A DNA stretch of 34,177 nt from Octopus bimaculoides (GCF_001194135.2 NC_068988.1:42104364-42138540), one strand, 5' to 3'. Shown: positions 13,603 to 34,177, counted from the first letter of the stretch. The notes: generated by a model not told the origin, from the sequence alone. Translations and numbers: made by a program.

Positions 13603-13779
13603 GTAAGAATATTTCCTCTATTACAAACATATTCTTTTACATTTTACTTTGCTATCTATTGACGCCTCTCGATTGTTTACATTCTAGCAAAAAAANNNNN
13701 NNNNNCGGTGGAGGGACAAACACAACCCCATACATACATATACATACATACGCATATATAGATATAAATATGTATCTTT

Positions 13780-15977: not shown

Positions 15978-18131
15978 TGAATATATTTCTGAAGTGCTTA
16001 AATATGATTTGACATTGCTATTTCAGATCGCATTTCTGGCTGCAACAACAAATATAGCACAAATACATGTCGTCACTAGCATTCTTGGCTAAGTTTATCA
16101 GGGCGTTCGTGAAATCGTTCAATATATAATAATGTTTCTACAACTGAATCTAGAAAGCACTTACAATAACTACTTGTGTATTTAGAAATAACATGTTAGT
16201 TTCATGTTCCTGAACGTTTTGCACAATTACTATAAGGAGGAGGGAGCTGAGTGTGGTGGATGGTACTAAGGAAGAGAGAAAGAGGCGCAGGGTGGGGGAA
16301 AAGAGGAGGAAGAAAATTACAAAAATGGTTATTAAATGATGGTAAAAAAATCACTCCAAAAATGGCCGTCTTTCATTTGAGGAAATTATTTTCTATATTG
16401 GCTGACAAAATCAGTTTATGAAAAAGAAAAACATCGAGCATTTAAATCTTCCAGGCATAAAGTATCTAGAATATAATATGAGAAAGACTGATAGCTAAAT
16501 AGTGGCAACTTGGTACTGTGAAATAAAACAGATATCATCTATAGCATATATCAATTCTTCAGGGGCAGCATTAAGTAGAATGCATTCAGAACATTATAAA
16601 AGGTGTTATTGATCAATTTCCATAAATATTCACACACAAAGACATACATCTGTATATGTATAAGTATAACTACAGACACATATATACACATACATATATA
16701 TATACACATCGATATATACTTATATGCATAAATGTATATATTTGTATATATATATATATNNNNNNNNNNNNNNNNNNNNNNNNNNNNNNNNNNNNNNNNN
16801 NNNNNNNNNNNNNNNNNNNNNNNNNNNNNNNNNNNNNNNNNNNNNNNNNNNNNNNNNNNNNNNNNNNNNNNNNNNNNNNNNNNNNNNNNNNNNNNNNNNN
16901 NNNNNNNNNNNNNNNNNNNNNNNNNNNNNNNNNNNNNNNNNNNNNNNNNNNNNNNNNNNNNNNNNNNNNNNNNNNNNNNNNNNNNNNNNNNNNNNNNNNN
17001 NNNNNNNNNNNNNNNNNNNNNNNNNNNNNNNNNNNNNNNNNNNNNNNNNNNNNNNNNNNNNNNNNNNNNNNNNNNNNNNNNNNNNNNNNNNNNNNNNNNN
17101 NNNNNNNNNNNNNNNNNNNNNNNNNNNNNNNNNNNNNNNNNNNNNNNNNNNNNNNNNNNNNNNNNNNNNNNNNNNNNNNNNNNNNNNNNNNNNNNNNNNN
17201 NNNNNNNNNNNNNNNNNNNNNNNNNNNNNNNNNNNNNNNNNNNNNNNNNNNNNNNNNNNNNNNNNNNNNNNNNNNNNNNNNNNNNNNNNNNNNNNNNNNN
17301 NNNNNNNNNNNNNNNNNNNNTATATATGTACGTATATGATTTGCGTGTATGTGCGTACTAGTCCAATAATTTCTATTCAGCTAGTTGTCTATCAATATAT
17401 CTGGCATGTATCATCCGTCTACCTACCTCCCTCTACCAGCGCCTATCATTCCACCATATATGGATACTCTAAAGTATATCTATATACAAATATATCCAGA
17501 AAAGCATATATTTCTATATTAGTGAATATTTTCGTGTATACGTGTGTCAGTATATGTGTTGCATGCCTGTGTGTCTGTGTTTGTGTGTGCCAGCGTCTAT
17601 ATATTTGGGTTACATTTTATCCTTATATTCGTTATCTAGCAAACTAGCTGGTCGGCTATCAGTCGATTTGAATATATATCTATGCATCTATATGTCAGTT
17701 TCTGAATGTTACTCTACTCATTCAAAAATCGCATGCACTCTTTCTGCCCCTCACTCTCCTTCCTTAAAAAAATATATATGGGGATTCATACATATACGTG
17801 TGAATATATAATATGTCAGTGTGTGAGAGAGACAGAGAGAGCAACAAAGAGATAGAGTGAGATAGAAATTTGTTTGCTTGTTGTATAAAAATAAACTCGA
17901 ATATAACTAAATGCCAGTTTACAATGAAGTGGAATATTTTAAATAAATTGTTATTTGTGCTGACAAAAGAAAACTTGATTATTGACAAGGAGAACAATAT
18001 TTACTAATTGCTCTTAACTTTACTCAATTAGGGGCAACCAATAAAGATTCAGAAGTGGAAATCATCTTCATTGCACATGAAAATATAATCAATTGTGATC
18101 TGGCCATATGGGTAAAAATACTTCAGTTAGA

Positions 18132-19172
18132 CTAATCAGTCTAAATGAATATTGGCATGGTAAACAAATACACAATGATACACCATGTGCGAAACTAAAG
18201 CGACTTCTTTAAGTAGAATATATCAGTACGGAGGGACAAAAATTAAACCGAGTGATTTGTTGTTTTATGTTATACAAATTAAAGTATAAATTCCTTTATT
18301 TCTTAAGAAATATAAATTTGCAACTGAAAAGTTTGAACGGAAAATTTTAAAAACATCGAAACTAGCCTCATAACCATCAACTTGATAGATGTCACCTTGA
18401 ATCTAAATAATTCTCAAGCGCTCTTTAACTAGAGTCCAATATAACACCACGTAAACAAACATTCTATCCACCCTAGGGATATTAACAATAATTTTGTCAA
18501 GAATATTTTCTGGTATTATCCAAACTATCTACAAAACAATGAATCTGTATTAATTCGTTTAATTACCATAGCGACGCTCTCTTTCTCATTGTAGTAGATT
18601 CCAATATAACATGCAATATGTAAAAGATATATAAGTTAAACTGAAACTAAACAAAAAGAAATATACAGTCTGACTTAATCCGGTATGCAATTTAACTGTT
18701 GTTATACAAGCTGCAAAAATTTTTTATTCTATTAAAGGAACATTTTCTATCACAATATAAATATAAACAATTTAGCAAAAATTACATCAGTATCTCAGAT
18801 TGCATTAGCCCTAATTTTGGAGTAATTCTTAAACTTAATTCGCCTAATTTTATCATTTTAATTGCATTAACACAAATAATTATCTATTAAACCGCACCCC
18901 TTACATTCATAGGTAGGTCACAGTTTTTATCAAAAACTGATGCGAAAGGCTGCATGTGACTTATTTACCGAAGTATGCACTAATTTACACCACGTACTAA
19001 CGCACATACTCACACATATAAATGCATACGCGTGCACTCACACATACACATCGGCAAGTGATGTAAGACGAATTGATTATGACGCTAATCAGTCTAAATG
19101 AATATTGGCGCTGTAAACAAATATACATTGATATATCATGCGCGAAACTAAAGCGACTCCTTTAAGTAGAAT
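18132..19172 (+). repeat. 88-bp direct repeat pair (18132-18219 and 19085-19172) bracketing the PLE remnant
   Basis: Ungapped manual alignment gives 79/88 identities, with an offset of 953 bp. Confidence 0.95.
18320..18890 (+). mobile_element. Penelope-like element RT C-terminal remnant
   Basis: Fragments INLIDVTLNLNNS, HVNKHSIHP, LSKLS, KRNI..(*=W)LNP and KFFILLKEHF...FSKNYISISDCISPNFGVILK follow the PLE pattern NFLDVTLNL..YxxxxSNHP..RLSxLS..RNIIWFNPP..FLxLxxxHF..KVSYSCxPN. Confidence 0.75.
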
Positions 19173-19402
19173 TCGGCTCTGCAGCAAAACAAACATGCTT
19201 GTGATGAGACGAGACAGTGTATATATACGCGCCCTCCACTTTTACGAACTATATATGCAGAGTTCCCTGTCATTCTAATATCGATTAGATACTACATATA
19301 TTATCAATACTGACGATTTCAAAGTACCAGCTAATCTGTTCGTTCCAGATATAGATCGAAGGGACATTGCTATGATGTCTCTGATCACTGGAGTTTGCTA
19401 GA

Positions 19403-19775
19403 CATTCCATTCACATTCCTCACTTTCCATTCACATTCATAACATTCCATTGACATTCCATTGACATTCCATTCACATTCCATTCACATTCCATTGACGT
19501 TCCATTCACATTCTTCACATTCCATTGACATTCCTCATATTCCAATCACATTCCATCACATTCCATTGACATTCCATTCACATTTTTCACATTCCACTCA
19601 CATTCCATTCAAATCCTCATATTCCAATCACTTTCCATTCACATTCCTCAAATTCCATTCACATTCCATTCACATTCCTCATATTCCAGTCACATTCCAT
19701 TCACATTCCATCCACATTCTATTCACATTCCATTCACAATTCTCACATTCCATACTCATTCCATTCCCATTCCTC
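19403..19775 (+). repeat. (CATTC)-based satellite/minisatellite, main unit CACATTCCATT/GACATTCCATT
   Basis: Directly visible degenerate tandem array. Confidence 0.95.
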
Positions 19776-19779
19776 CAAT

Positions 19780-20002
19780 CCTGGAAAGTCCGAGTAAGGG
19801 GTGAATTACTACCTGGAAAGTTTCCAGGAGGGGTGAATTACTTCCTGGAAAGTTCCTAGGATGGGGAGGAGGGAGGTTAATTACTTTCCGAAAAGTTCTG
19901 AGGAGAAGGGTAAATTACTACCTGGAAAGTTCCGAGGAATGGGTGAATTACTTCCAGGAAAGTCCCGAGGAGGGGGTGAATTACTTCCAGGAAAGTTCCG
20001 GG
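19780..20002 (+). repeat. ~33-bp minisatellite, about 7 copies, consensus CCWGGAAAGTTCCGAGGAGGGGGTGAATTACTW
   Basis: Unit starts at 19780, 19812, 19844, 19888, 19921, 19954 and 19987. Confidence 0.95.
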
Positions 20003-20030
20003 ATTAGAGCACGAACGGGGAATAAGTAAA

Positions 20031-20155
20031 GGAAGGAATCTTCAACATTCCAGAGAGGGGGATTTGAGAGATGAAGCGAGGAAGGAATCTTCAACATTCC
20101 AGAGAAAGGGATTTGAGAGATGAAGGTGAGGAAGGGAGGAAGTAATCTTCAACAT
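20031..20155 (+). repeat. ~50-bp tandem repeat, two full copies plus a partial third
   Basis: GGAAGGAATCTTCAACATTCCAGAGA.GGGATTTGAGAGATGAAG at 20031 and 20080; partial AATCTTCAACAT near 20144. Confidence 0.92.
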
Positions 20156-20274
20156 AGATTCCTAGGTACAATTGAGTGGGCAAACAAGAATATGAGACAC
20201 TGCCTAGTGCTTTTTTTTATTTTGATAACCCTGGTAAATAAACGAACAGCAGTTGTGAAGCAGTGATGAGGGAG

Positions 20275-20492
20275 AAACACAGAGACAAAGACATACACAT
20301 ACACTTACATATATACATACATATATATACGATTTATTTTTTTCAGTTTCTTTCTACAAAATCCACTCACAAGGTTTTGGTTGGTCTGAGGCTATAGCAG
20401 AAGACACATGCCAATTCACTACATAGTAGTGCTGAACCCAGGACCATGTGTTTTGGAACCAAATTTCTTACCACACAGCCACACCTGCACCT
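20275..20492 (-). mobile_element. SINE family B copy with a MIR/CORE-like segment
   Basis: AAATCCACTCACAAGG..GAGGCTATAG.AGAAGACAC..GCC...GCTGAACCCAGGACCATGTG...TTCTTACCACACAGCCAC; the minus strand gives a tRNA-like head with a B-box-like GGTTCA. Confidence 0.75.
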
Positions 20493-20493
20493 A

Positions 20494-20554
<61 letters not shown>

Positions 20555-20885
20555 NNNNNNNNNNNNNNNNNNNNNNNNNNNNNNNNNNNNNNNNNNNNNN
20601 NNNNNNNNNNNNNNNNNNNNNNNNGCACACGTATGTGTGTGTATGGGTGTATATATATATGCATGTATATATGTGTATATATATGTGTACATATTACATC
20701 TATATCCATATATATTCATCTATACATATACATCTATACATTTACAGCTATACATATACATCTATATATATACATATACATCTATATATATACATGTATA
20801 TATACACACATCTATATATATATACATGTATGTATATACACATCTATATATATATATATATACATTTGTGCATATGTATACACAC

Positions 20886-20961
<76 letters not shown>

Positions 20962-21053
20962 NNNNNNNNNNATGCTTGTATATACGTGAGATAATAGTTT
21001 CACTCTAATAGCTTCAGTATTAAAGTGAAACTACATATATATATATATATACA

Positions 21054-21088
<35 letters not shown>

Positions 21089-21482
21089 ATATATATATAT
21101 TATATTATATTACATTATATACATACATTATGCACATATATTATACAGATTATACATACATTATACATATATACATATATTGTACATATATAATATACAT
21201 ATGTATGTATGTATGCATGTATGTATGTATGTATGTATATATGTATGTGTGTGTGTATGTATGTATGTAGGTATGTATGTATGTATGTATGTATATAAAG
21301 CTGTGTATGAGTGCATATATGTGTATGAATATTGAAAAAACAAAATGAAAAATAGAAATGTAAATACTGTCATATTTTTTTCTATGATAAAGTTTTCAAA
21401 GAATTTTCTTCTCTGTTTTTCCGTTACAAATTTACTCGTGTGAAACCTCTTAACCTTGTATTTGTACATGTGTGTGAGTGAG

Positions 21483-21544
<62 letters not shown>

Positions 21545-21706
21545 NNNNNNNNNNNNNNNNNNNNNNNNNNNNNNNNNNNNNNNNNNNNNNNNNNNNNNNN
21601 NNNNNNNNNNNNNNNNNNNNNNNNNNNNNNNNNNNNNNNNNNNNNNNNNNNNNNNNNNNNNNNNNNNNNNNNNNNNNNNNNNNNNNNNNNNNNNNNNNNN
21701 NNNNNN

Positions 21707-21766
<60 letters not shown>

Positions 21767-22400
21767 CGTGTATGTGTGAGTGTGTGTATGTAATCGTCTA
21801 TCTAACCATCAATCGATTCAATCTATCTATCTGTTTCTTCGTATTCCACCCTTCTATAAGAATTAAAGTGAAAGGTGGAAAAATCTCTGATCCTTTCTCA
21901 AAGAAAAGCCTTTTATCAAGAAGCTTTCAGATCAAAATTTTCTCTGCACTGTTTCACAGACGCAATGCTGGAAAGTTCCGTTATTATCTATCAGCGTAAC
22001 CACACATTCGCATTTTTTGCTAACGTCAGAACTGACGTCAGAGCGGCTAGATCTGACAGTAGCGCCGTCTTAATTATTTTCATTCTGATGTTTTAAAGAA
22101 CCAGAACATCGTTGAGAATAATGCAGAGGATGTAATAGGGGAAACTAAATAGAAACTTATTTGTCCAAATAAATAATTTAGACAAATAAGTATAATTCGA
22201 TTAGTGGATTAAGTGTTGAGTAGAGCACCGACACAGTTTAGGCTACGTGTTGGCATCCGCAGTTGTGATACACTTTCTTTGGATCTACTTCAGGAACTCT
22301 GCAGTGGCAGTTAGGGTAATAGCATTAATTAATAGTAGGAGATGGATTTTAACAACAAGCCAGCCGACACTAAAAGTCTCTAGTGAAACTTCTTTATCAA

Positions 22401-22448
22401 TGTACCTGAAGAGACCCCCGACTGATGGGTCGAAACATATGTTCTACC
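22401..22448 (+). ncRNA. Minimal type I hammerhead-ribozyme-like core (probably degenerate; PLE-type)
   Basis: CTGAAGA (22406-22412), stem II GACCC/GGGTC (22413-22417/22427-22431), GAAA (22432-22435), then C-ATAT-G-TT with a palindromic loop. Stem I is only GTA/TAC with a C-C mismatch at the first position. Confidence 0.55.
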
Positions 22449-22508
22449 AAATAAAAGTCATATATAAAATCCATCTCCTATTATTAATACTATATATGTA
22501 CATATATA

Positions 22509-23361
22509 CAGTGGTACCTTGACTTACGATCTGCACCATACTGATCTGCACTATACTAAATCAGAAGGAGTCGATAAAGGTTATAACGCCAGCCAAGGGC
22601 ATTAAAATAATTTCTAAACAGCGAACATCTATCCATGAAAATATGAAGAAGCTGCTGATGGTGTGGTTGATGCTGTGACGGAGGATATAATCTGCGAGAA
22701 TGCATGAGCTATTTACGCTGATTTGCTGCAGCAAACCCCAGACTTGTACGGGCGAGGCATCGGGCGAGCCGTTTAAAGCTCGTCGGGACTGGTTCTAGAA
22801 TTTTAAAAAGAGGACAGGCATTCACCCCCTTGTCAGGCACGGTGAGGCAGTGAGAACGGATATGAAGGTAGCTGTGGATTACCTCAAAACTTTTACCGGA
22901 ATTATAGCAGCCGAAAGATACGTCCTCCAGAAAATCTTCAACTGTGACGAGACAGGACATTTTTGGAAGATGCCAAGGAGAACTTATATAACGGCAGAGG
23001 AGAAGATCCCNNNNNNNNNNNNNNNNNNNNNNNNNNNNNNNNNNNNNNNNNNNNNNNNNNNNNNNNNNNNNNNNNNNNNNNNNNNNNNNNNNNNNNNNNN
23101 NNNNNNNNNNNNNNNNNNNNNNNNNNNNNNNNNNNNNNNNNNNNNNNNNNNNNNNNNNNNNNNNNNNNNNNNNNNNNNNNNNNNNNNNNNNNNNNNNNNN
23201 NNNNNNNNNNNNNNNNNNNNNNNNNNNNNNNNNNGGAAGGGGCAGAACGGATTAATGGCATTTCAGTTCATTTCAATGGGGAAATTTGATTTGATATACG
23301 AGTAATTTGAGTTACGAGCTCCATCACGGAATGAATTAAACTCGTAAGTCAAGATACCACT
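22509..23361 (+). mobile_element. Tigger/pogo-type DNA transposon, internally deleted, both TIRs present
   Basis: Left TIR TA|CAGTGGTACCTTGACTTACGA (22509-22529); right TIR TCGTAAGTCAAGATACCACT (23342-23361). Transposase fragment VRHGEA..QKIFNCDETGHFWKMPRRTYITAEEK is the DDE_1 first-Asp motif. Contains a gap. Confidence 0.93.
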
Positions 23362-23374
23362 CCTTTACTCTTTT

Positions 23375-23580
23375 ACTCTTATACTTGTTTCAGTCATTTG
23401 ACTGCGGCCATGGTGGAGCACCACCTTTAGTCGAGCAAATCGACCCCAGGACTTATTCTTTGTAAGCCTAGTACTTATTCCATCGGTGTCTTTTGCCGAA
23501 CCGTTAAGTGACGGGGACATAAACACACCAGCATCGGTTGTCAAGCAATGCTAGTGGGGACAAACACAGACACACAAACA
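23375..23580. mobile_element. SINE family B fragment
   Basis: Clearly homologous to 13780-13975 (CAGTC..CTGCGGCCATG..TCGACCCC..GAACCG.TAAGT.ACGGGGAC.TAAACACACCAGC..GGTTGTCAAG). Confidence 0.8.
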
Positions 23581-23582
23581 TA

Positions 23583-23965
23583 AAAACCTTGTCGCGTCGA
23601 GGTTTAAACTCTTCTTGTGCTGGTTGTGACCAGTCGCTGATATTGTGACGTATGCTTTCATTCTCCTGTCCACATTTTCTGCACAATGGCGACTTTGATG
23701 TGTGTCTGATAAGGTACTTGACAGAATTTGTTCTTAGTGCCTGCTCATGGGCAATAAAGATCATCCCTTCAGTCTTTTCTTTTAGATACTCATTCCGCAT
23801 CCATCTCCATCATTCAGGTGCAGCCAGATTTCTAATGAAAACACTGCGCAATGGCTTCTCTTTTCCTAAAGCCACCTTCTCCTCACGCATCCTTTTCTTA
23901 AAATCAACCAAATATTCTGTATCTTCTTGTACCTCCTCATTCAGCGTTGCCTTCAGCATTCACTC
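23583..23965 (-). mobile_element. R4/Dong-like RLE non-LTR retrotransposon fragment (zinc-knuckle region)
   Basis: KEKPLRSVF...WRWMRNEYLKEKTEGMIFIAHEQALRTN...SPLCRKCGQENESIRH...AQEEFKPRRDKV: the CCHC zinc-knuckle/RHD region that precedes the restriction-like endonuclease. Confidence 0.85.
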
Positions 23966-24559
23966 GTGACATGACTGTAAATACTTACAAGATGAAATGC
24001 ACCCAGATCTTACACGTTCACCAATTAACCCTCTTCGACCTTCATTACGGGGATGGTACAATCTGGCTACATTACCGCGTGAATGGAAGCACTTATTCTT
24101 GTTCTTCGATTTTGACTTGTTTAAGTCCATTTGACAGTACCCACACCATACCTTATAACTCCCACTGCCTAGACATTAATGGCGTCAATTAAGTTATCTC
24201 AATTTAGCTTATATTAACAAAGTTTCTTCCCGCTCCAAATGTACTCTTCTCTTATCGTCTTCTTTTTTTTTTTTTTTNNNNNNNNNNTTTTTTTTTTTTG
24301 TATCCAAGTGTAGTTCTGGCTGGTGTATTCACAGATATTTATATCCACCGCGGTCCACTTTCTTCTTAGATGCTCCGTCAGGGAGTTCAATACGTGTGTT
24401 ATCTATTTTCTCACCCCTTCCCATCCCCAGAATAGCAGATTCGTCAAAATGTCTATTGCTGTTGTTGTTGTTATTTTTTCCATTTTACTTCTCAAAGTTC
24501 TCGATTTTACTTGTTTCGGTTAATTTTGTAAGAGCGAATAGCAACCTGTTGTCAAACGT

Positions 24560-24790
24560 CATACAGGGTCTCGACAGATTCAAGCACGCAGATTCGTTAA
24601 CAAACCCGGCAAAATACTTAGCGATATTTCGTCCGTCTTTACACTCTGGGTTCAAATTCCACCGAGATCGACTTTGCCTTTCATCTTTTACGGGTCGATG
24701 AAATAAGTATCAGTTGAACACTGGGGTCGATGTAATCGACATATCTCCTCTTCCCAAACTGCTGGCACTGTGCCAAAAATTGAAATCATT
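24560..24790 (+). mobile_element. SINE family A copy ending in an (ATT)n tail
   Basis: GCAGATTCGTTAA..CCGG..AAATACTTAGCG.TATTTCGTC..GGGTTCAAATTCC.CCGAG.TCGACTTTGCCTTTCATC..GGGTCGAT...CACTGGGGTCGATGTAATCGAC. Confidence 0.85.
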
Positions 24791-24809
24791 ATTATTATCA
24801 TTATCATTG

Positions 24810-25180
24810 TTCAGTAGTTTTATTTTTATAACGTGCTTTCACTTCACTACCGAGCGCAGCTCTGTGCGCCTTGGGTATGTGCTGTGGTTTGCTGTGGTGC
24901 TCTTATGTTTACTGTATTAAAAGTGTTTTGCGTAGAATGTGTGCAGTACCCAGTAGTGCAATTTTCTGTATGTTATATATATTTGTAAGTCCTGGTGTTT
25001 TTGTTATGTATTTGTCTGAATATTTTTTTATTATACCTAAGGCACCTACTATGATAGGAATTGTTTCTGTTTTTAGATTCCACATTCGAGTTATCTCTAT
25101 TTCCAGGTCTTTGTATTTTGAAAGTTTTTCCATTTCTTTTAGAGAAACGTTGTCATCTGCTGGTATTGATACATCAATTA
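24810..25180 (-). mobile_element. 3' end of an R4/Dong-like RLE LINE (endonuclease C-terminus plus 3' UTR)
   Basis: EKLSKYKDLEIEITRMWNLKTETIPIIVGALG...IQKIALLGTAHILRKTL*. The 3' UTR ends in ...CTACTGAA and runs into (AAT/GAT)n. The 5' side enters a gap, beyond which (TAT)n resumes. Confidence 0.9.
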
Positions 25181-25506
25181 NNNNNNNNNNNNNNNNNNNN
25201 NNNNNNNNNNNNNNNNNNNNNNNNNNNNNNNNNNNNNNNNNNNNNNNNNNNNNNNNNNNNNNNNNNNNNNNNNNNNNNNNNNNNNNNNNNNNNNNNNNNN
25301 NNNNNNNNNNNNNNNNNNNNNNNNNNNNNNNNNNNNNNNNNNNNNNNNNNNNNNNNNNNNNNNNNNNNNNNNNNNNNNNNNNNNNNNNNNNNNNNNNNNN
25401 NNNNNNNNNNNNNNNNNNNNNNNNNNNNNNNNNNNNNNNNNNNNNNNNNNNNNNNNNNNNNNNNNNNNNNNNNNNNNNNNNNNNNNNNNNNNNNNNNNNN
25501 NNNNNN

Positions 25507-25548
<42 letters not shown>

Positions 25549-25562
25549 CATTATTATTATTA

Positions 25563-25621
<59 letters not shown>

Positions 25622-25624
25622 GCT

Positions 25625-25860
25625 AGGGTGGTGTGGATTGGCAAGAGCGTTAGAGCATTGGACAAAAATGCTAAGCAGTGTTTCTTCTGGCTTTTCAATT
25701 CTGAGTTCAAATCCTTCTGGAGTCAAATTTCGCCTTTCATCCCTCAACGGTCGATAAAACAAAGTTCTGCAGAGTTGCTGGTATCGACTAGCCAGCATCA
25801 CCCACCCTACACTCCCACCACAACTCATAAAATTGTTAGTCTTGTGTCTAAATTAGAAAC
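25625..25860 (+). mobile_element. Diverged SINE family A copy
   Basis: TGGCAAGAGCGTTAGAGCA..GACAAAAATGCT..TTCTGAGTTCAAATCC..GCCTTTCATCC..GGTCGATAAAA. Confidence 0.75.
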
Positions 25861-25911
25861 AAGTTGTAGTAGATGAAACATTTTACTTGTTTTAATATAA
25901 CTTTATTTTAG

Positions 25912-25967
25912 ATACATGCTGTTTGTTTGGACGTTATTGTTCGGAAAATCCATTATCGTTGCTAACG
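25912..25967 (+). CDS. Coding exon encoding the signal-peptide core of the same EGF-CFC-like gene
   Basis: Acceptor actttattttag| at 25911 and donor ACG|GTGAGT at 25967/25968. Read phase 2 to phase 1 it gives YMLFVWTLLFGKSIIVAN(G), a hydrophobic core with a plausible A-N-G cleavage site, and joins 27061 in frame. ATG at 25916. The phase-0 reading hits a stop, and the phase-1 reading would put exon 27061 into a stop-containing frame. Confidence 0.72.
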
Positions 25968-26390
25968 GTGAGTACCCTTGTTTGGTTAACACCTTATATT
26001 TTATGATTTTGTTTTGTTGAAAATCCGTTTTGTCTTTTCAGATTACATGTTAAGTATTTTTGGTTTAATTCAATGATAATCTATATTGGCTAATTGCAAA
26101 ATTGCAGCTCCTTTGTTTAACCAGTTCAGTTATAGAAAAAAAACCAATTTGTTGAAGTTCTCTCGTTCTCTTTTCTTCATGTGTGTGTGTGTGTGTGTGT
26201 ATGTGTGCATGTATAAAAATATATGTATGCATGGATGGATGTGGATGCATGTATGTATGTATGCATGTATGTATGTATGCATACAGATATGTAATGATAT
26301 CCATGTGTGTGTGTGTGTGCGTACATTATACGCACACACACACACATATGCGTCTTTGTCTTTTTCTCTTTCTCAATATGTTACATACAT

Positions 26391-26431
<41 letters not shown>

Positions 26432-27060
26432 NNNNNNNNNNNNNNNNNNNNNNNNNNNNNNNNNNNNNNNNNNNNNNNNNNNNNNNNNNNNNNNNNNNNN
26501 NNNNNNNNNNNNNNNNNNNNNNNNNNNNNNNNNNNNNNNNNNNNNNNNNNNNNNNNNNNNNNNNNNNNNNNNNNNNNNNNNNNNNNNNNNNNNNNNNNNN
26601 NNNNNNNNNNNNNNNNNNNNNNNNNNNNNNNNNNNNNNNNNNNNNNNNNNNNNNNNNNNNNNNNNNNNNNNNNNNNNNNNNNNNNNNNNNNNNNNNNNNN
26701 NNNNNNNNNNNNNNNNNNNNNNNNNNNNNNNNNNNNNNNNNNNNNNNNNNNNNNNNNNNNNNNNNNNNNNNNNNNNNNNNNNNNNNNNNNNNNNNNNNNN
26801 NNNNNNNNNNNNNNNNNNNNNNNNNNNNNNNNNNNNNNNNNNNNNNNNNNNNNNNNNNNNNNNNNNNNNNNNNNNNNNNNNNNNNNNNNNNNNNNNNNNN
26901 NNNNNNNNNNNNNNNNNNNNNNNNNNNNNNNNNNNNNNNNNNNNNNNNNNNNNNNNNNNNNNNNNNNNNNNNNNNNNNNNNNNNNNNNNNNNNNNNNNNN
27001 NNNNNNNNNNNNNNNNNNNNNATATATAGCAGTGTATTTAATCAAACCATCTACTTTCAG

Positions 27061-27139
27061 GTGAAAATGATTTGAAAATTAAACAATGTTGTCAAAATGG
27101 AGGAACGTGCATTCTTGGAAGTTTTTGTGTCTGTCTTCA
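27061..27139 (+). CDS. Internal coding exon of an EGF-CFC (Cripto/Cryptic/one-eyed pinhead)-like secreted protein; first part of the EGF-like motif
   Basis: Acceptor ctactttcag|G at 27060/27061 and donor CA|GTAAGT at 27139/27140. The 79-nt exon (phase 1 to phase 2) reads (G)ENDLKIKQCCQNGGTCILGSFCVCL(H/Q). CCQNGGTCILGSFCVC matches 13/16 residues of human Cripto CCLNGGTCMLGSFCAC (recalled from memory), including the adjacent CC typical of EGF-CFC proteins. Orthology cannot be assigned, so no symbol is given. Confidence 0.85.
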
Positions 27140-27199
27140 GTAAGTTATCATCGACTTTCCGTAAAAAAAGAAAATTATTTCTTTATGTTTTTTTTTATT

Positions 27200-28035
27200 T
27201 ATTTAGCCTTTTATCCGAGGCCAACTTTGCTTTTCATTTTGGTGGGATTTAAGAACCAGTTGAACATTGGAATTGATGTCATCAACTAATAACCGAACTA
27301 AAATTACTGGCCTTGCGCCAAAACTTGAGACTATTTTTATATTTTTTTTGTTTTTGTTTGTTTCGGTTTTTTTGGTTTTTTGGGGGGGCTTTTTTGCGGT
27401 AGTTTTCTTTTATTACGTATATCTACTACCTTCCCGAAAGCAGTTCTGTGTGTCTTGAGTACTTACACTGTTTTGTCTTGGTTTTGAGGTTTCTATTGCA
27501 GTACACGTATCCTATATAATATGCATTTGGGGCTCAGTCGTGCTTTTTTTTTTTCTGTATGTTGTGTGTTTGTAAGTACCGGATTTTTGTTATGCATTTG
27601 TCTACATACTCTTTCTCATCCTCAAAGCAGCTCTTATAAAGATTGTTTCCAGTACTCAAATCTGAGTTATCTCTATTTTTATATCTTTGTATTTGTACAA
27701 TTTCTCTATCACTTTTATAAATACAAAGTGTTGTTGAAAAGTTCCTGGCTTTAAGGGTTTTTTATCGATCCCGAGAAGATGAAAAGCGAAGCTGACCTTG
27801 GCGGAATTTGAATCCAGATCATGAAGAGCCTAAAGAAATGTCTCAAAGCACTTTGTCCGATTCGCTGATGATTTTATCAGTTTGCCTCCTTTTTACAAAT
27901 TAATAATAATTATTATTATTATTATTTATTTCGGGGTCGCCAAAGTAAGTGCCAGAGAAACACTGGGGTCGATGTAATCGACTAGTCACTGCCACCAAAA
28001 GAAATATCAGACTTTGTGCCTTTAATAGAAAGGGT
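27200..28035. mobile_element. Cluster of SINE family A fragments (27200-27325 +, 27755-27895 -, 27925-28035 +) with a mariner-TIR-like stub at ~27720-27757
   Basis: Shared SINE motifs (CCGAGG.CAACTTTGC.TTTCAT; GGCGGAATTTGAA; CACTGGGGTCGATGTAATCGACT). GAAAAGTTCCTGGCTTTAAGGGT recurs at ~28697. Confidence 0.7.
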
Positions 28036-28049
28036 TATTGTTGTTGTTG

Positions 28050-28121
<72 letters not shown>

Positions 28122-28126
<5 letters not shown>

Positions 28127-28334
28127 TAGTTTTATTTTTATAACGTGCTTTCACTTCACTACCGAGTGCAGCTTTGTGTGCCTTGGGTATGTGCTGTGGT
28201 TTGCTGTGATGCTCTTACGGTTACTTTATTGAAAGTGTTTCGCGTAGGATGTGTACAGTGCCCAGTAGTGCAATTTTCTGTATGTTAAATATACTTGTAA
28301 GTTCTGGTGTTTTTGTTATGTATTTGTCTGAATA

Positions 28335-28338
<4 letters not shown>
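28122..28338 (-). mobile_element. 5'-truncated R4/Dong-like LINE copy flanked on both sides by (TTA)n
   Basis: Closely similar to 24810-25030 (TTCAGTAGTTTTATTTTTATAACGTGCTTTCACTTCACTACCGAG...TATTTGTCTGAATATTTT); pure (TTA)n on both sides. Confidence 0.9.
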
Positions 28339-28394
<56 letters not shown>

Positions 28395-28401
<7 letters not shown>

Positions 28402-28565
28402 GTTTAGAAATTTTGTGGTGTGGGAATAGTCAAATATATCGACCCCAGTAATTGAGTACTACTTTGTTTTATCACTTTGGGAAGATGAAAGGTAAACTTG
28501 ACTTCGGTGAGATTTGAACTCGGAACGTAAACAGCCGAAATAAATCCTGTAAGGCATTTTATCCA
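28395..28565 (-). mobile_element. SINE family A copy
   Basis: ATCGACCCCAGT...GATGAAAGG.AAA.TTGAC.TCGG..AGATTTGAACTC.GAACGTAA...GAAATA..AAGGCATTTT. Confidence 0.75.
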
Positions 28566-28683
28566 ATAATAATTTCAAACAAAGACACAGCATTATATGT
28601 CTGTAGAGTTAGGGAAAGTCGTTTAAATCGAATGTCTTATTTTATTAGGAGTTGAACTCAAAGCATAAACGGCCATAAGTACA

Positions 28684-28720
28684 TACGAGGGGTGCTGAAA
28701 AGTTCTTGGCTTTAAGGGTC
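28684..28720 (+). mobile_element. Mariner-like terminal inverted repeat stub (TA-CGAGGGGTGCTGAAAAGTTC)
   Basis: Starts with TA and resembles mariner/MITE termini; a similar stub lies at ~27720-27757. No partner TIR was found in inverted orientation. Confidence 0.45.
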
Positions 28721-28938
28721 GGCCTGGTTCGAGACCCAACCTTTTGAGCTCTTTTACTAAGTGTGTAATAAGTTCAATATGCATGTGAATCTGAGAGGAG
28801 AACAGATTGAGGGGATTTGTTGAGGAGAATATGTTGAGGGGAATCTGAAAGGGGAATAAAGTCGTAATTAACTGATCTTGCTGTATTTTCTTTTGCCCAA
28901 AGCCAGAAACTTATCAGTACCCGTTCGTATAGAAAATT

Positions 28939-29005
<67 letters not shown>
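28939..29005 (+). repeat. (TAG)n microsatellite
   Basis: Perfect tandem TAG run. Confidence 0.98.
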
Positions 29006-29006
<1 letters not shown>

Positions 29007-29669
29007 ACAACAGGCGTCTTTCGACTGAAAACGATTCAAATTGAGCTGACGTGCATGAAGTGAAACCCTAAAGGCGGGAACATGGGAGATGGACACAAGA
29101 AATGTTGACGGTCGGCAATCAGGCAAAGAAAGAAAGATCATGGTTGGCCAGACACCGGTCACGATGAAGGAGGAGAGATGGGTAGGAGACAGCGAGATTG
29201 AAGGATTAGAAAAAAAAATCAGTGACAAAGAGAAAGGTACAGGGGAGATAATCGAGTGGAAAATAGAGGGAGTTAAAGAAAGAGAGGGCCAAGAAATGTG
29301 GGAAAGGGGAGCGAGAAAAAGGAAGGAAAATGAGAGGGGGAATAAAAGATAAAGTGAGAGTCGTACAAAATTTAGATACACACCTTCTATAATGTGAACA
29401 CAGGGGTGTACGTACGCCGCTATATATATATATAAAGATAAAAATAGGTAAAAAACGCAATAGAGGGCATTAAGATGGTTCGATCGGTTACCCTCAGAAA
29501 AGTCTATATTTGAGTATATCATTCTACAGTTTTTTTTTTTCCTTCTTAAGCTCGACACGTCAAAGACGCTTCCACTTTCTCAATCTCTACGGCTTCTTTT
29601 CAGTTTGCATTCTGTACTGTTGTTTTCGCCGATAATGTTGAGCATAGATAGCTAAAGAGAAAGATAGAC

Positions 29670-29718
<49 letters not shown>

Positions 29719-29720
29719 CA

Positions 29721-29756
<36 letters not shown>

Positions 29757-30479
29757 TATATATACATACATACATATACATATCTACATACATATACATA
29801 TATATATATATACACGTACACAATATATATATATAAACATACATACACACAAAGGAATNNNNNNNNNNNNNNNNNNNNNNNNNNNNNNNNNNNNNNNNNN
29901 NNNNNNNNNNNNNNNNNNNNNNNNNNNNNNNNNNNNNNNNNNNNNNNNNNNNNNNNNNNNNNNNNNNNNNNNNNNNNNNNNNNNNNNNNNNNNNNNNNNN
30001 NNNNNNNNNNNNNNNNNNNNNNNNNNNNNNNNNNNNNNNNNNNNNNNNNNNNNNNNNNNNNNNNNNNNNNNNNNNNNNNNNNNNNNNNNNNNNNNNNNNN
30101 NNNNNNNNNNNNNNNNNNNNNNNNNNNNNNNNNNNNNNNNNNNNNNNNNNNNNNNNNNNNNNNNNNNNNNNNNNNNNNNNNNNNNNNNNNNNNNNNNNNN
30201 NNNNNNNNNNNNNNNNNNNNNNNNNNNNNNNNNNNNNNNNNNNNNNNNNNNNNNNNNNNNNNNNNNNNNNNNNNNNNNNNNNNNNNNNNNNNNNNNNNNN
30301 NNNNNNNNNNNNNNNNNNNNNNNNNNNNNNNNNNNNNNNNNNNNNNNNNNNNNNNNNNNNNNNNNNNNNNNNNNNNNNNNNNNNNNNNNNNNNNNNNNNN
30401 NNNNNNNNNNNNNNNNNNNNNNNNNNNTCTTTTTACTTCTCTCATTAATTGCTTTCTCATTATAAATCTCGATTGAAAC

Positions 30480-31005
30480 ATGACATCACAAACCTTACCA
30501 GCCCCACCAGCAACACTAACGCAGCTAACGTTACTATCAGCCGAACCTAACGCCAGCATCACTATTAACGCTGCCACAGTCGTCAGCATCGCTATCAGCA
30601 CCACTACCAACACCACCAACAAAATTACCAGCCCCAGCACCATCAACAGTACTACTACCCACACCGCCACCGATGCCAGCTTCCCTAAAAACACCACTAA
30701 CACCAGCACCGCAAACATCAACACAAACACCACCAAGACCACCACTAATACCACCAACAACAACCACAAACACTGCCACTATTTAAACCAATACTACTAC
30801 CAACACCAGCACAACTTCCAACATCACCACCAACAGCAGCAACAACATTACCACTAACAACACCAACAGCACCACTACCACCAATCCTACCACCAACACC
30901 AACACCAACACCAACAACACCAACAACACTACCATCATCACCACTACCAACACCACCACCAACAACACCACCACCAACACCACCTTTGCCACCAGCATCA
31001 CCATG
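30480..31005 (+). repeat. Degenerate (CAC/CAA/ACT) trinucleotide low-complexity tract
   Basis: Visible ACC/AAC repetition; it explains the Thr/Asn-rich + ORF and the Val/Leu-rich - ORFs. Confidence 0.85.
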
Positions 31006-31469
31006 ATGGAATTAGGATTGAAATTTTCCTTAAATTTTAAGGCTACCGTCTTAAATCTTAAAAAATATGGAAGGATATTTTACATGTAGTTTGAATACTC
31101 CTAAAAGCGCGAAATTGTCACGACTGGAACTCTTTTAATCATAGATATGCTCGATCAAGGCTGCCCTGGGCTGAACAAAACCCTCTGCAACCAACAATAC
31201 TACCACAACCTCATCAACAGCAACACTAAAACCAGAGGGGAACGTCTACGAGCTTACTTGATGTAGTAGAAATAGCAGCTAAATTCCATTCAAATTACTT
31301 AAAATAGGCAGGACATACAGACCAATATAATCTTTGTAATGCAAGTACATGGAATGGTTATATGTTTTTAATCATATCTGTTCTACTAGGGCTGGCTGGT
31401 TGAGAGTTAAACAACAGCAAGAACAGTAGCGCTATTATAACATTTATTTCTAATATAGGCACAAACCTA

Positions 31470-32290
31470 GAATTTTTTTATTGTTATTTGAGGGGAGGGG
31501 GAAAGTCGATTACATCGAACCAGTACTTGACTGATTCTTATTTTATCGATCCCAAAAGAATGAAAGGCTAAGTCAACCTCAATAGCAGTCGATCTCAGAA
31601 CGTAAAGAGCCAGGGAAAATGCCGCTAAGCATTACGTCCGACTCGCTAACGATTCTGCCGGCGCACCGCAAGCCGCGTTTGTCGCTAATAGCTACACAGC
31701 CCGCCAGCTTTTTGTTGAATTAATGTTAAGGTGTTATGATGTTCACATTTACTTAAAAGAACCTTTAAAAGCTCCCCAAATAAAAAAAAAAGTACTGATT
31801 AATGTACCTTAGGTTGAATCTCACTTTCTCTGTCAACTATATCTAGTAGATACAGTTCAGCTAGTATTATTTAGTAGTAACAATAATATTTATTTGATCA
31901 AATCATATCTAATTATTTTATCTAATTATTTTACTTATCTTAATTTTACTATTATTATTGTTGTTGTTATTGCTGCTGCTGCTGTTATTGTTTTCGAATG
32001 CCGCCGAGGTCGACTTGGCCTTTCATCTTTTCAGGGTCGATAAATTAAGTACCAGTTACGCACTGAAGTCGATGTTATCGACTATCCCCTTTCCCCACAT
32101 TTCAGGCCCTGAAAGGATTATTATTATCATTATTGCCGTTGTTGTTTTCGAATGCTGCTGAGGTCGACTTTGCCTTTCATCCTTTTGGAGTCGATTAAAT
32201 AAGTCCCAGCTGAACACTGGGGTCGATGTAATCAACTTAACATCTCCCCTGAAATTGCTGGCCTTGTGCCAATATTTGAAGCCAACATCA
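31470..32290. mobile_element. SINE family A copies (31470-31670 -, 31985-32110 +, 32140-32290 +)
   Basis: GCCGAGGTCGACTT.GCCTTTCATC.TTT..GGGTCGAT.AAAT.AAGT.CCAG and its reverse complement. Confidence 0.8.
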
Positions 32291-33329
32291 TTGTTATGGA
32301 TGTTGCTGTTGTTATTTTGTAGTTAGGGTTAGTGTCATTATTATTTTATAATTTTAAATACTGTAATTGATTGTTTAATTATTATTTCTTTATTAGTTTT
32401 AATTACTTTTACAATTATTTTTTATTATCTTTTAATTTGCTTTTCTTTTAATTATATTTTACCTTATTTTTTAATCTTTTTTACCTTAATTAATCCTAAC
32501 CATATTATAAGTATTTTAGTTTTTAAGATTTATTCTTTTAAGGAAAATCTTTCTTTTGAAATAGAATATCTTTAGTAAATAATAAATCCATTATTTTCCT
32601 TTAGAATTGTAATTAATTTTTCCTTTCTTCTTCCACTCATTGTTTATATTTAGATTTAATACTGATCAAATGACATTTCCATCGTAAACTAAATAATTAT
32701 CTGCTGAATAGCTTGGTCTTACGTACCTCTGTCTATTTGAAATAGTCAGTAATAGTTTAAATCGGGTTGGAAATTTTGCTTTAAACATTCTTCATGCTAA
32801 CGAGTAGAATTTAGGAAACTAAGTATCATATTATAATACATTTCTAGTATGATCTAATAAATACTATTCCTAAGTAGGTCTGCTGAAATACCTCCTTTAC
32901 TGCTTACACTGGTCAAACATTGTTAATTTTACCAATATCCATCTTCCTTAAAATGTTCACTATTCTTAGCAGTGTTAAATTTATCTCAGTAGAATCATAT
33001 ATAAGTCAACTAATATGTGAAATCAATTGATATGTATGGTTACTACATCGCAGAATTTTGAACTGTTAACCTATCTGAAACGCTTTTAAGCAAATTCAAG
33101 AATGTATAATTGGCCATTCTTTATGGACTTTTCTATACTTTGTGACCTTATACTATATTTATTTGGTGTTTGAACTTCGGATTTGCAAAGTGGACAGACA
33201 GCAAAAAGTAATTTTACAGCTGACCTGGATTACAATGGCTTTCACTGGAGAACTTAGTTACCCAAATAAACCCTACGGAGTGCTTATAAAGAATTCTCCT
33301 GGATTTTCAATACCTCACTTTCCATTGTT

Positions 33330-33360
<31 letters not shown>

Positions 33361-34134
33361 CATATATGCGTGCATATAAATGTATGTATAAATATGTGTG
33401 TGCATAAACATATTATATAGACATATACAATATGTATATGTATATTTATATACACACACGCGCATACACGCTAATATATATTGTTTAATGCATATACACT
33501 CATATTACTCTTTGTGTGTTCGCGCGCGCATGCGTGTGTGTGTGTGTGTGTATGTGTGTGTGTGTGTGTGTGTGTGCGCGTGTGTGTGTACAGTGAAGGA
33601 GATGTAAAGTTGTGAAACAATCTATCCATCTTCTCGTTATCATTGATTAACTAAAGGTCTCTCTCGTCTACTACTTTGTAATTTGTTGCAATTGTCATGC
33701 TGAATCAATTCTTCGTAATTTGTTCAAACAAATTGCATACATTTGGAGACGAGACGTATAGAGTAGAGATAGAGATAGAGGTGGAGATGAAGATATATTG
33801 AGAGAGGTAAAAATGAAACATGGAAAGTATTAGAAAGAAAGATACAAGTCTGATAGAGCACCAGTGTGGTGGTCTGGTGTGGAATGTTGCAGTGTAGTTC
33901 ATTGTAATAAAGTCTGCAGAAGAGGAAGCAGTCATAAAAACGTGCACATAATAAGAGATTGAGAGTTAAACAAAGACAATAAGGAGGGGAGAGGGGGGGT
34001 AAAAGTACGTTCGAGAGTAAAAGAGAAATAGGGTGGTGTTGTATTTATTTAATTTTAAAATTACTTCGTCATTACATTCTATAGTGAAACAAAATTTGCA
34101 TATATATATATATTACACATACAAAGATACATGC

Positions 34135-34177
<43 letters not shown>

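What the first reader, a model, noticed from the sequence alone, without database searches (positions are those of the whole stretch)
25912..27139. Hidden EGF-CFC (Cripto-like) gene: signal peptide followed almost immediately by the EGF motif
Seen: two small exons with strong splice sites and compatible phases join to give YMLFVWTLLFGKSIIVANG-ENDLKIKQCCQNGGTCILGSFCVCL. Both are invisible to the ORF track. Known: EGF-CFC proteins (Cripto, Cryptic, oep) are Nodal co-receptors with a truncated EGF domain starting CC; Nodal signalling controls chirality in snails. Inference: only about 8 residues separate the predicted cleavage site from the first Cys, shorter than the N-terminal region of vertebrate Cripto. 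This could be a compact cephalopod EGF-CFC, a member of a lineage-specific paralogue set, or a small secreted Cys-rich peptide lacking CFC/GPI parts. The Thr in the GGTC site that is O-fucosylated in Cripto is retained.
Basis: partly seen in the sequence, partly recalled or inferred. Interest (0 to 1): 0.75.

Follow-up and report, generated by a model that had tools for sequence, protein, structure and literature searches.

The report
Octopus Cripto-like (EGF-CFC) gene, 5' exons
The two small exons are real and form the front part of the octopus version of Cripto/Cryptic, the co-receptor that vertebrates need for Nodal signalling; public annotation already contains the gene but has not named it, and it keeps a threonine that published work treats as a deuterostome invention.

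Summary
Exon 25912-25967 and exon 27061-27139 have consensus splice sites and compatible phases. Together with a third small exon at 13580-13602 they encode exactly the first 53 residues of Octopus bimaculoides XP_014773847.1, "uncharacterized protein LOC106871742" (167 aa).

That protein continues, in exons 17.6 kb beyond the window end, with the sixth EGF cysteine and a CFC domain. The CFC domain scores 30.8 bits against Pfam PF09443 (cut-off 23.2) and matches mouse Cripto CFC, PDB 2J5H (E 1.3e-6). The protein ends in a hydrophobic C-terminal tail.

The assembly gap lies inside intron 1. Gapless O. sinensis and O. vulgaris assemblies hold 412 and 346 nt of microsatellite there and no exon.

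Intron positions and phases match oyster and zebra-mussel EGF-CFC genes, and partly match mouse Tdgf1.

So this is a genuine cephalopod EGF-CFC orthologue: already predicted by RefSeq, unnamed, and not found in the searchable literature. EGF-CFC in spiralians has been published since 2020-2022.

The notable point is the retained Thr in CQNGGTC. Among the spiralians I sampled it is shared only with the bivalve Dreissena.

A Nodal co-receptor function is inferred, not shown.

The parts
13580..13602 (+). Coding part of the first coding exon: ATG GAA AGG TTT ACG ATG TAC AG|gtaaga. It encodes MERFTMY plus two nucleotides of Arg8 and carries the annotated start codon.
   Evidence: tblastn of the Octopus protein against the window; sequence; the same exon and donor occur in O. 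sinensis and O. vulgaris; the spliced CDS translates exactly to XP_014773847.1.
13603..25911 (+). Intron 0, 12,309 nt as assembled, phase 2. It contains eight assembly gaps, microsatellites and transposon debris.
   Evidence: Exon mapping. The orthologous introns are 18,985 nt in O. sinensis and 19,535 nt in O. vulgaris.
25912..25967 (+). Exon 1 of the finding (second coding exon, 56 nt): last nucleotide of Arg8, then YMLFVWTLLFGKSIIVAN, then the first nucleotide of Gly27. It holds the hydrophobic core and the predicted cleavage region of the signal peptide.
   Evidence: Hydropathy (9-residue Kyte-Doolittle means up to 2.39) and Ala/Gly at -3/-1.
25968..27060 (+). Intron 1, phase 1, 1,093 nt as assembled. 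It includes the assembly gap at 26432-27021 (590 N, an estimated length).
   Evidence: Gapless orthologous introns are 932 nt (O. sinensis) and 864 nt (O. vulgaris). The gap equivalent is low-complexity sequence without an exon.
27061..27139 (+). Exon 2 of the finding (third coding exon, 79 nt): G27 ENDLKIKQ CCQNGGTCILGSFCVCL plus CA of Gln53. This is the first five cysteines of the Cripto-type EGF module, including the C-x4-T-C O-fucosylation consensus and the G-T...F Nodal-binding residues.
   Evidence: The exon ends in phase 2, two codons after Cys5, exactly as in the oyster and Dreissena genes.
27140..34177 (+). First 7 kb of intron 2, which is 24,668 nt in the assembly. No further coding exon of this gene lies in the window. 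Exon 3 (EGF Cys6 plus the whole CFC domain, 149 nt) would sit at window-equivalent 51808-51956. The last exon lies 1.7 kb further on.
   Evidence: No CFC signal in any frame of the window. Exons 3 and 4 were located in L003.

Best explanation
The two exons are coding exons 2 and 3 of 5 of the single-copy Octopus bimaculoides EGF-CFC gene. This is LOC106871742 (XP_014773847.1, 167 aa), the orthologue of vertebrate Cripto/Cryptic/Oep and of the spiralian EGF-CFC genes described in 2020-2022.

Shown here: the gene encodes a secretory-type N-terminus, an 8-residue spacer, a truncated EGF module (CC-x5-C-x5-C-x-C-x8-C), a CFC domain, a poorly conserved stalk with one N-glycosylation sequon, and a hydrophobic C-terminal tail.

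Inferred mechanism, by homology: the protein is cleaved after Gly27, GPI-anchored at the cell surface and O-fucosylated on Thr42. It then acts as a bridge co-receptor. Its EGF face (G41, T42, F48) would bind a Nodal-class TGF-beta ligand held by a type II activin receptor. [quoted passage not shown]

The gene identity is near certain. The Nodal-coupled function is a prediction. It rests mainly on Octopus keeping the Thr whose introduction into the snail protein was sufficient to make it work in zebrafish.
For: Identity.
- The spliced exons translate to residues 1-53 of XP_014773847.1. All five exons reproduce the 167-aa protein in three Octopus genomes.
- The window's gaps coincide, at an offset of 10,579, with those of O. 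bimaculoides CM046608.1.

Family.
- Pfam CFC PF09443 scores 30.8 bits against a cut-off of 23.2.
- Mouse Cripto CFC (2J5H) matches at E 1.3e-6.
- The protein was recovered at 86 bits by an exhaustive EGF-CFC profile search. Named relatives in that search are 'teratocarcinoma-derived growth factor' (Magallana) and 'cryptic protein-like' (Mytilus, Ruditapes).
- All 13 invariant and 8 near-invariant family columns are kept.

Gene structure.
- The phase-2 intron two codons after EGF Cys5 is shared with oyster and Dreissena.
- The phase-1 intron in the codon after the last CFC Cys is shared with both of these and with mouse Tdgf1.
- A phase-1 intron lies just before the EGF module in Octopus, oyster and mouse.

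Constraint. Between O. bimaculoides and O. sinensis/vulgaris, residues 36-102 show 0 non-synonymous and 3 synonymous differences. The flanking parts of the protein show 5-6 non-synonymous against 1-2 synonymous each.

Mechanism in vertebrates. The EGF domain binds Nodal and the CFC domain binds ALK4 (PMC11751877 abstract). G87/T88/F94 and H120/W123 are the critical residues. Crepidula EGF-CFC rescues zebrafish oep only after L56T (PMC9907556).
Against: - I could obtain no transcript evidence. The collection holds these exact proteins only on genome records, with no RNA-derived contigs, so expression and the 25967/27061 junction rest on gene models and on conservation.
- The signal peptide and the GPI signal were judged only by hydropathy and the -3/-1 rule.
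- Whether Octopus has a Nodal ligand was not established, and no paper I could search addresses it.
- In the only spiralian tested, Crepidula, EGF-CFC is not needed for left-right asymmetry and appears uncoupled from Nodal (PMC9907556).
- Cephalopods have lost spiral cleavage (PMC5104510) and, from general knowledge rather than any test here, lack a coiled body. A chirality role is therefore not expected a priori.
- The AlphaFold model is of middling confidence (mean pLDDT 68.9). Its PDB matches are generic EGF modules only.
Confidence: 0.85

Rival explanations
1. The gene is a genuine EGF-CFC orthologue but works independently of Nodal, as proposed for the snail Crepidula. It might, for example, have an ancestral role at gastrulation or the blastopore, or modulate other TGF-beta ligands or other pathways. 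The threonine would then be incidental.
For: The published model holds that the Nodal/EGF-CFC connection arose within deuterostomes and that EGF-CFC is dispensable for left-right asymmetry in Crepidula (PMC9907556). The residue at this position varies freely among molluscs: I, V, R, L and T. That variation suggests weak constraint outside deuterostomes.
Against: All five residues that matter for Nodal and ALK4 binding are present together in Octopus. A Thr alone made the snail protein functional in fish. The EGF-CFC domain shows no amino-acid change between Octopus species.
Confidence: 0.4
2. The locus makes only a small secreted 53-residue Cys-rich peptide. Exon 2 would read through its donor into the TAA at 27140-27142, leaving no CFC or GPI part.
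For: Read-through gives CAG TAA immediately. The original O. bimaculoides gene set contains exactly this 53-aa product, UniRef A0A0L8HAY5, 'EB domain-containing protein'.
Against: - The peptide would have five cysteines, an odd number, and an incomplete EGF module.
- The donor TCA|gtaagt is conserved in three species.
- Exon 3 starts in the matching phase, supplies the sixth Cys and a full CFC domain, and shows 0 non-synonymous changes.
- The same intron position and phase occur in oyster and Dreissena genes.
Confidence: 0.04
3. The gene is an unexpressed relic or pseudogene, predicted only by homology-driven annotation.
For: No transcript-derived contig carrying the protein was found in the collection. 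Introns are very long, and the locus is full of repeats and gaps.
Against: The 504-nt ORF is intact, and all eight splice sites are conserved in three species that differ by about 11.5% in the flanking intron DNA. In the domain, substitutions are synonymous only.
Confidence: 0.05
4. The motif belongs to an ordinary multi-EGF protein such as Notch, Delta or the fibropellins, and the resemblance to Cripto is superficial.
For: The exon-2 peptide alone gives only weak generic EGF matches: Pfam hEGF at 18.8 bits and Notch1 EGF12 variants at 14-15 bits. Several multi-EGF proteins scored high in the profile search through summed repeats.
Against: Generic EGF matches need gaps and lack the adjacent CC. 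The gene contains a single EGF module followed by a CFC domain. No other EGF-like exon lies in the window.
Confidence: 0.01

Closest known systems
Vertebrate EGF-CFC proteins: Cripto/TDGF1, Cryptic/CFC1, zebrafish Oep, Xenopus FRL1/XCR
   Same: - The architecture matches: signal peptide, truncated EGF (CC, short B-loop), CFC and a hydrophobic C-terminus.
- All 12 domain cysteines are kept.
- The G-T-F and H/W functional residues and the C-x4-T-C fucosylation consensus are kept.
- The EGF core is 14/16 identical to rodent Cripto and 22/27 to a marsupial Cryptic.
- The phase-1 introns before the EGF module and directly after the last CFC Cys are shared.
   Different: - The N-terminal region is much shorter: 8 residues after the predicted cleavage site, against about 40-50 in mammals.
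- The last CFC loop has 7 residues rather than 8.
- Octopus has an intron inside the EGF module and none between EGF and CFC. Mouse has the opposite arrangement.
- Function is untested.
Spiralian EGF-CFC genes (Crepidula fornicata Cfo-EGF_CFC, PMC9907556; database models in Magallana, Mytilus, Haliotis, Lottia, Patella, Pomacea, Nucella, Dreissena, Capitella, Lingula)
   Same: - Orthologous domain, 44-59% identical.
- The same 7-residue last loop.
- The same exon structure, including the phase-2 intron two codons after Cys5 in oyster and Dreissena.
- A short N-terminus in some of these species.
   Different: Octopus has Thr at the position equivalent to human T88. The published spiralian set has L/R (gastropods), M/I (annelids) and V (brachiopods). 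In my sample only the bivalve Dreissena shares the Thr. No cephalopod member appears in the papers I could search.
Canonical EGF modules that are O-fucosylated by POFUT1 (Notch1 EGF12, factor VII EGF1) and the short-loop EGF modules of WIF-1
   Same: The CQNGGTC motif between Cys2 and Cys3, and the local fold. The model superposes on Notch1 EGF12 at 1.5 Å over 31 columns.
   Different: These modules have a C1-C2 loop, and most have a longer C3-C4 loop. They occur in tandem arrays and are never followed by a CFC domain.

Membership tests
EGF-CFC (Cripto/FRL-1/Cryptic) | Variant EGF-like module: first two cysteines adjacent, spacing CC-x5-C-x5-C-x-C-x8-C | tested here: met
   CCQNGGTCILGSFCVC is encoded in the window. 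The sixth Cys (HFHGRYC) lies in exon 3 outside the window. The spacing is identical to that of 29 relatives.
EGF-CFC (Cripto/FRL-1/Cryptic) | CFC domain (Pfam PF09443) directly after the EGF module | tested here: met
   Residues 69-100 score 30.8 bits against a curated cut-off of 23.2. Mouse Cripto CFC NMR structure 2J5H matches at E 1.3e-6. The domain lies outside the window; no CFC exon was found in the window itself.
EGF-CFC (Cripto/FRL-1/Cryptic) | N-terminal signal peptide | tested here: met
   Heuristic only. The n-region MERFTMYRY has net charge +1, the hydrophobic core runs over residues 10-25, and A-N-G precedes Glu28. AlphaFold models a helix at 3-22. No trained predictor was available.
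EGF-CFC (Cripto/FRL-1/Cryptic) | C-terminal hydrophobic GPI-attachment signal | tested here: inconclusive
   A hydrophobic tail at 146-164, preceded by small residues (NTSS), aligns with the tails of other members. No GPI predictor or experiment was available.
EGF-CFC (Cripto/FRL-1/Cryptic) | Residues needed for Nodal binding (human G87, T88, F94) and ALK4 binding (H120, W123) | tested here: met
   G41, T42, F48, H74 and W77 sit in the aligned columns. The role of these residues is taken from PMC9907556.
EGF-CFC (Cripto/FRL-1/Cryptic) | Family-typical exon structure | tested here: met
   Both domain-internal and domain-flanking introns are identical in position and phase to Magallana and Dreissena. 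Two of the three correspond to mouse Tdgf1: the post-CFC intron exactly, and the pre-EGF intron in phase only, two codons apart.
EGF-CFC (Cripto/FRL-1/Cryptic) | Co-receptor activity for Nodal-class ligands (binding, Smad2/3 activation, rescue of oep) | not testable with these tools
   This needs expression and embryo assays. The presence of an Octopus Nodal was also not established.
EGF-CFC (Cripto/FRL-1/Cryptic) | Expression as a spliced mRNA | not testable with these tools
   No RNA-seq mapping was available. No transcript contig carrying the protein is in the collection. The only support is RefSeq models in three species.
Multi-EGF extracellular proteins (Notch/Delta/fibropellin type) | Tandem canonical EGF modules with a C1-C2 loop | tested here: not met
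   There is a single EGF module, an adjacent CC, and no further EGF signal in the window or in the protein.

The most novel reading that the evidence does not exclude
Octopus, and independently or ancestrally the bivalve Dreissena, carries a naturally 'Nodal-competent' EGF-CFC with the critical threonine. If so, either the Thr and the Nodal/EGF-CFC coupling predate the protostome-deuterostome split and were lost repeatedly in spiralians, or cephalopods re-evolved the coupling convergently. Either outcome would overturn the published view that the Thr, and with it the coupling, arose within deuterostomes.
Probability: 0.25. Interest if true: 0.65.

Novelty: new member of a known kind. Interest (0 to 1): 0.35.

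Why it matters
EGF-CFC proteins are the gatekeepers of Nodal signalling in vertebrates. The current evolutionary account (Truchado-Garcia et al. 2022, PMC9907556) holds that spiralian EGF-CFC cannot couple to Nodal because it lacks one threonine, and that this threonine appeared during deuterostome evolution.

The octopus gene, conserved in three species, has that threonine inside a perfect O-fucosylation consensus. It also has every other residue known to matter. The zebra mussel has the threonine too.

This provides a natural test case. Wild-type Octopus EGF-CFC should rescue zebrafish oep if the single-residue model is right. The phylogenetic distribution of the residue needs re-examination with cephalopods and bivalves included.

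On the practical side, three RefSeq 'uncharacterized protein' entries and a truncated 53-aa model can now be named. The flagged assembly gap is harmless to the gene model.

Tried and rejected
1. Word-index homology search with the 44-aa peptide found nothing. This was a tool limitation, not an absence. Rodent Cripto shares seven 5-mers with the query, and the identical 53-aa Octopus fragment is in the collection as a cluster member.

2. Search for the rest of the gene inside the window. Regex scans, a six-frame hmmsearch with a mammalian EGF-CFC profile, and tblastn with the Octopus protein found no EGF Cys6 or CFC exon. A Cys-containing segment at 33834-33959 was inspected and dismissed as chance. 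The exons lie beyond the window.

3. The exon-2 peptide alone gave only weak generic EGF hits against PDB and Pfam. That could not settle family membership.

4. A single-peptide exhaustive search was considered and rejected. Cripto-type hits would score only about 30 bits (E about 0.04 at library size) and would be swamped by multi-EGF proteins. A profile search was used instead. Multi-EGF proteins did appear near the top of it.

5. The chromosome-level O. bimaculoides assembly could not test gap continuity because it carries the same gaps. Sister-species assemblies were used instead.

6. AlphaFold2 followed by Foldseek against PDB gave a medium-confidence model and only generic EGF matches, none at E<=0.001. 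This adds nothing beyond the sequence evidence.

7. Rfam found no RNA family in the window.

8. Literature searches for cephalopod EGF-CFC or cephalopod Nodal found nothing.

9. I first took the ATG at 25916 to be the start codon. The orthologous models show an upstream coding exon instead.

Full report
**Observation.** Exon 25912-25967 is bounded by ttttag| and |gtgagt. Exon 27061-27139 is bounded by tttcag| and |gtaagt. One nucleotide is carried across the first junction and two (CA) out of the second. The join reads YMLFVWTLLFGKSIIVANG-ENDLKIKQCCQNGGTCILGSFCVCL(Q). Reading through the second donor gives CAG TAA, so the exon must be spliced or the product ends there. A profile built from 86 mammalian Cripto EGF-CFC domains matched only this exon in all six frames of the window (22.4 bits, E 5e-8). 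The core CCQNGGTCILGSFCVC is 14/16 identical, without gaps, to rodent Cripto CCLNGGTCILGSFCAC. Generic EGF modules match only with gaps and at 14-19 bits.

**The gap.** The 590-N gap at 26432-27021 lies in the intron between the two exons, with (TA)n on both sides. The chromosome-level O. bimaculoides assembly carries the same gaps and gives no independent test. The gapless O. sinensis and O. vulgaris assemblies do. The left flank (25600-26431) and the right flank (27023-27600) align at about 88.5% identity, collinearly and in the same orientation. They are separated by 412 nt and 346 nt respectively. That interval is (TA)n, (CT)n and (TG)n-like sequence with no exon. Because the gap is intronic, its length does not affect the reading frame.

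**What it is.** A word-index search with the 44-aa peptide found nothing, but that index is not exhaustive. I built a profile from the window peptide plus eight diverse mammalian EGF-CFC domains. An exhaustive search with it over 1.84 billion representative proteins gave 464 hits at E<=0.001. One of them, P0200, has TQCCQNGGTCILGSFCVCL, 18/19 identical to the window. Its cluster holds four entries:
- Octopus vulgaris CAI9727186.1;
- O. sinensis XP_036361489.1;
- O. bimaculoides XP_014773847.1, 'uncharacterized protein LOC106871742', 167 aa;
- a 53-aa UniRef entry, A0A0L8HAY5, 'EB domain-containing protein'.

The first 53 residues of the O. bimaculoides protein are identical to the window's exons. 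The 53-aa entry is exactly those exons plus the read-through stop. The extra N-terminal residues MERFTMY(R) are encoded at window 13580-13602, followed by AG|gtaaga. This confirms that the acceptor at 25911|25912 is used and that the annotated start codon lies 12.3 kb upstream. The window's gaps coincide with those of CM046608.1 at a constant offset of 10,579, so the window is O. bimaculoides.

**Whole gene.** In all three species, five coding exons of 23, 56, 79, 149 and 197 nt splice with GT-AG sites into a 504-nt ORF that translates exactly to the database proteins. In O. bimaculoides the introns are 12,309, 1,093, 24,668 and 1,705 nt. Exon 3 (Q53-HFHGRYCE... through the last CFC Cys) would lie at window-equivalent 51808-51956, 17.6 kb past the window end. 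That explains why no CFC exon was found in the window.

**Family membership.**
- The full protein hits Pfam CFC (PF09443) at 30.8 bits against a cut-off of 23.2.
- Its best PDB match is the mouse Cripto CFC domain, 2J5H, at E 1.3e-6.
- Its best non-Octopus database matches are coelacanth, elephant-shark and marsupial EGF-CFC/Cryptic proteins, at E 1e-14 to 1e-12 against 5.8 billion sequences.
- In a 30-sequence alignment spanning molluscs, annelids, a brachiopod, amphioxus and vertebrates, it keeps all 13 invariant and 8 near-invariant columns. These include all 12 domain cysteines, G41/T42/F48 (human G87/T88/F94) and H74/W77 (human H120/W123).
- The N-terminus has a charged n-region, a hydrophobic core and A-x-G before Glu28. 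The C-terminus is a hydrophobic tail preceded by NTSS. CQNGGTC fits the C-x4-[ST]-C O-fucosylation consensus. These last points are heuristic.

**Gene structure as independent evidence.**
- The intron that ends the window's exon 2 lies in phase 2, two codons after EGF Cys5 (C-L-[CA|A]). The oyster gene has it at the same place and phase (C-P-[GA|G]), and so does the Dreissena gene (C-P-[AA|A]).
- The intron after the CFC domain lies in phase 1, in the codon following the last Cys, in Octopus, oyster, Dreissena and mouse Tdgf1.
- The intron before the EGF module is phase 1 in Octopus, oyster and mouse. It lies 6-8 residues before the CC.
- Mouse differs in having an EGF|CFC intron and no intra-EGF intron.

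**Constraint.** Between O. bimaculoides and the O. sinensis/vulgaris pair, the EGF-CFC domain (residues 36-102) has 3 synonymous and 0 non-synonymous differences. The signal peptide plus spacer has 1 synonymous and 5 non-synonymous, and the C-terminal part has 2 and 4-6. The counts are small, but together with the intact splice sites they argue against a pseudogene.

**How it probably works.** In vertebrates, Nodal bound to its type II receptor uses the Cripto EGF domain as a docking site, while the CFC domain recruits ALK4 (PMC11751877). G87, T88, F94, H120 and W123 are the critical residues (PMC9907556). Octopus has all five. The most likely mechanism is therefore the same bridge co-receptor function at the cell surface. 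This step is inferred. I could not establish that Octopus has a Nodal ligand, and the only spiralian tested so far (Crepidula) seems not to use EGF-CFC for Nodal-dependent asymmetry.

**Comparison with what is known.**
- EGF-CFC was long considered deuterostome-specific. Heger et al. 2020 placed three lophotrochozoan sequences in the orthogroup (PMC7535936).
- Truchado-Garcia et al. 2022 described orthologues in gastropods, annelids and brachiopods. None of the papers I could search mentions a cephalopod member.
- In my sample, Octopus (three species) and the bivalve Dreissena polymorpha have Thr. Mytilus has I. Magallana and Haliotis have V. Argopecten, Lottia and Patella have R. Solemya, Pomacea, Nucella and Capitella have L. 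Lingula has I.

**Verdict.** The gene is not hidden from annotation: RefSeq predicts it in three species, and an older truncated model exists. It is unnamed, however, and to my knowledge undescribed as a cephalopod EGF-CFC. It is a new member of a known family. The one feature of real interest is the retained threonine, which makes a published evolutionary model directly testable.

**Extra checks that added little.** An AlphaFold2 model had mean pLDDT 68.9, with about 65-86 over most of the EGF-CFC region. It gave only generic EGF matches in the PDB. Rfam found nothing in the window.

Noticed in passing
window 1995-2787 (-) and 3867-4301 (+): Remnants of Mos1/mariner-type transposases lie upstream of the gene. 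They comprise an HTH_48 domain (83 bits) with a partial DDE domain (72 bits) on the minus strand, and a Transposase_1/DDE_3 C-terminal fragment on the plus strand.
   Followed up: partly
window 24785-25034 and 28097-28346; also 25068-25148 / 27644-27724: Copies of a dispersed repeat of about 250 nt (92% identical) sit on either side of exons 1-2. A second, weaker repeat pair lies nearby. These are probably interspersed element fragments.
   Followed up: no
window 30570-31011: An ACC/CAC-rich imperfect tandem tract with extreme GC skew (-0.73 for 30001-31000) lies in intron 2, just after the gap at 29859-30427.
   Followed up: no
whole window (14 N runs); L003: The chromosome-level O. bimaculoides assembly GCA_001194135.2 keeps the same gaps, at a constant offset of 10,579, wherever it overlaps the window. 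It cannot be used to check any gap in this window. Most gaps abut microsatellites.
   Followed up: yes
L007 (Dreissena polymorpha CM035926.1) and cluster of P0219: The zebra mussel has two EGF-CFC paralogues on different chromosomes. Both are short, and the representative carries Thr at the Cripto T88 position (CCLNGGTC). This is a second molluscan lineage with the 'deuterostome' residue.
   Followed up: partly
database clusters of P0231, P0249, P0227: There are lineage-specific expansions of EGF-CFC in molluscs. At least six near-identical genes sit on one Patella caerulea contig (KAK6165656-63). Ruditapes philippinarum and Mya arenaria also have several copies. Octopus showed a single cluster.
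   Followed up: no
UniRef A0A0L8HAY5 (P0263) versus window 13580-27142: The original O. bimaculoides gene model for this locus is a 53-aa truncation that ends at the read-through TAA after exon 2. It is named 'EB domain-containing protein'. This mis-annotation hides the family.
   Followed up: yes
tool behaviour: The word-index homology search returned no candidate for the 44-aa query. Yet proteins sharing 7 or more 5-mers, and one containing the whole query, are in the collection. Negative results of that tool for short queries are not informative.
   Followed up: yes
hits P0121, P0122, P0123 (1165-2072 aa, 11-33 matched stretches): A few very long multi-EGF proteins outrank true EGF-CFC members in the profile search through summed weak repeats. 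Ranking by whole-sequence score alone would mislead here.
   Followed up: partly
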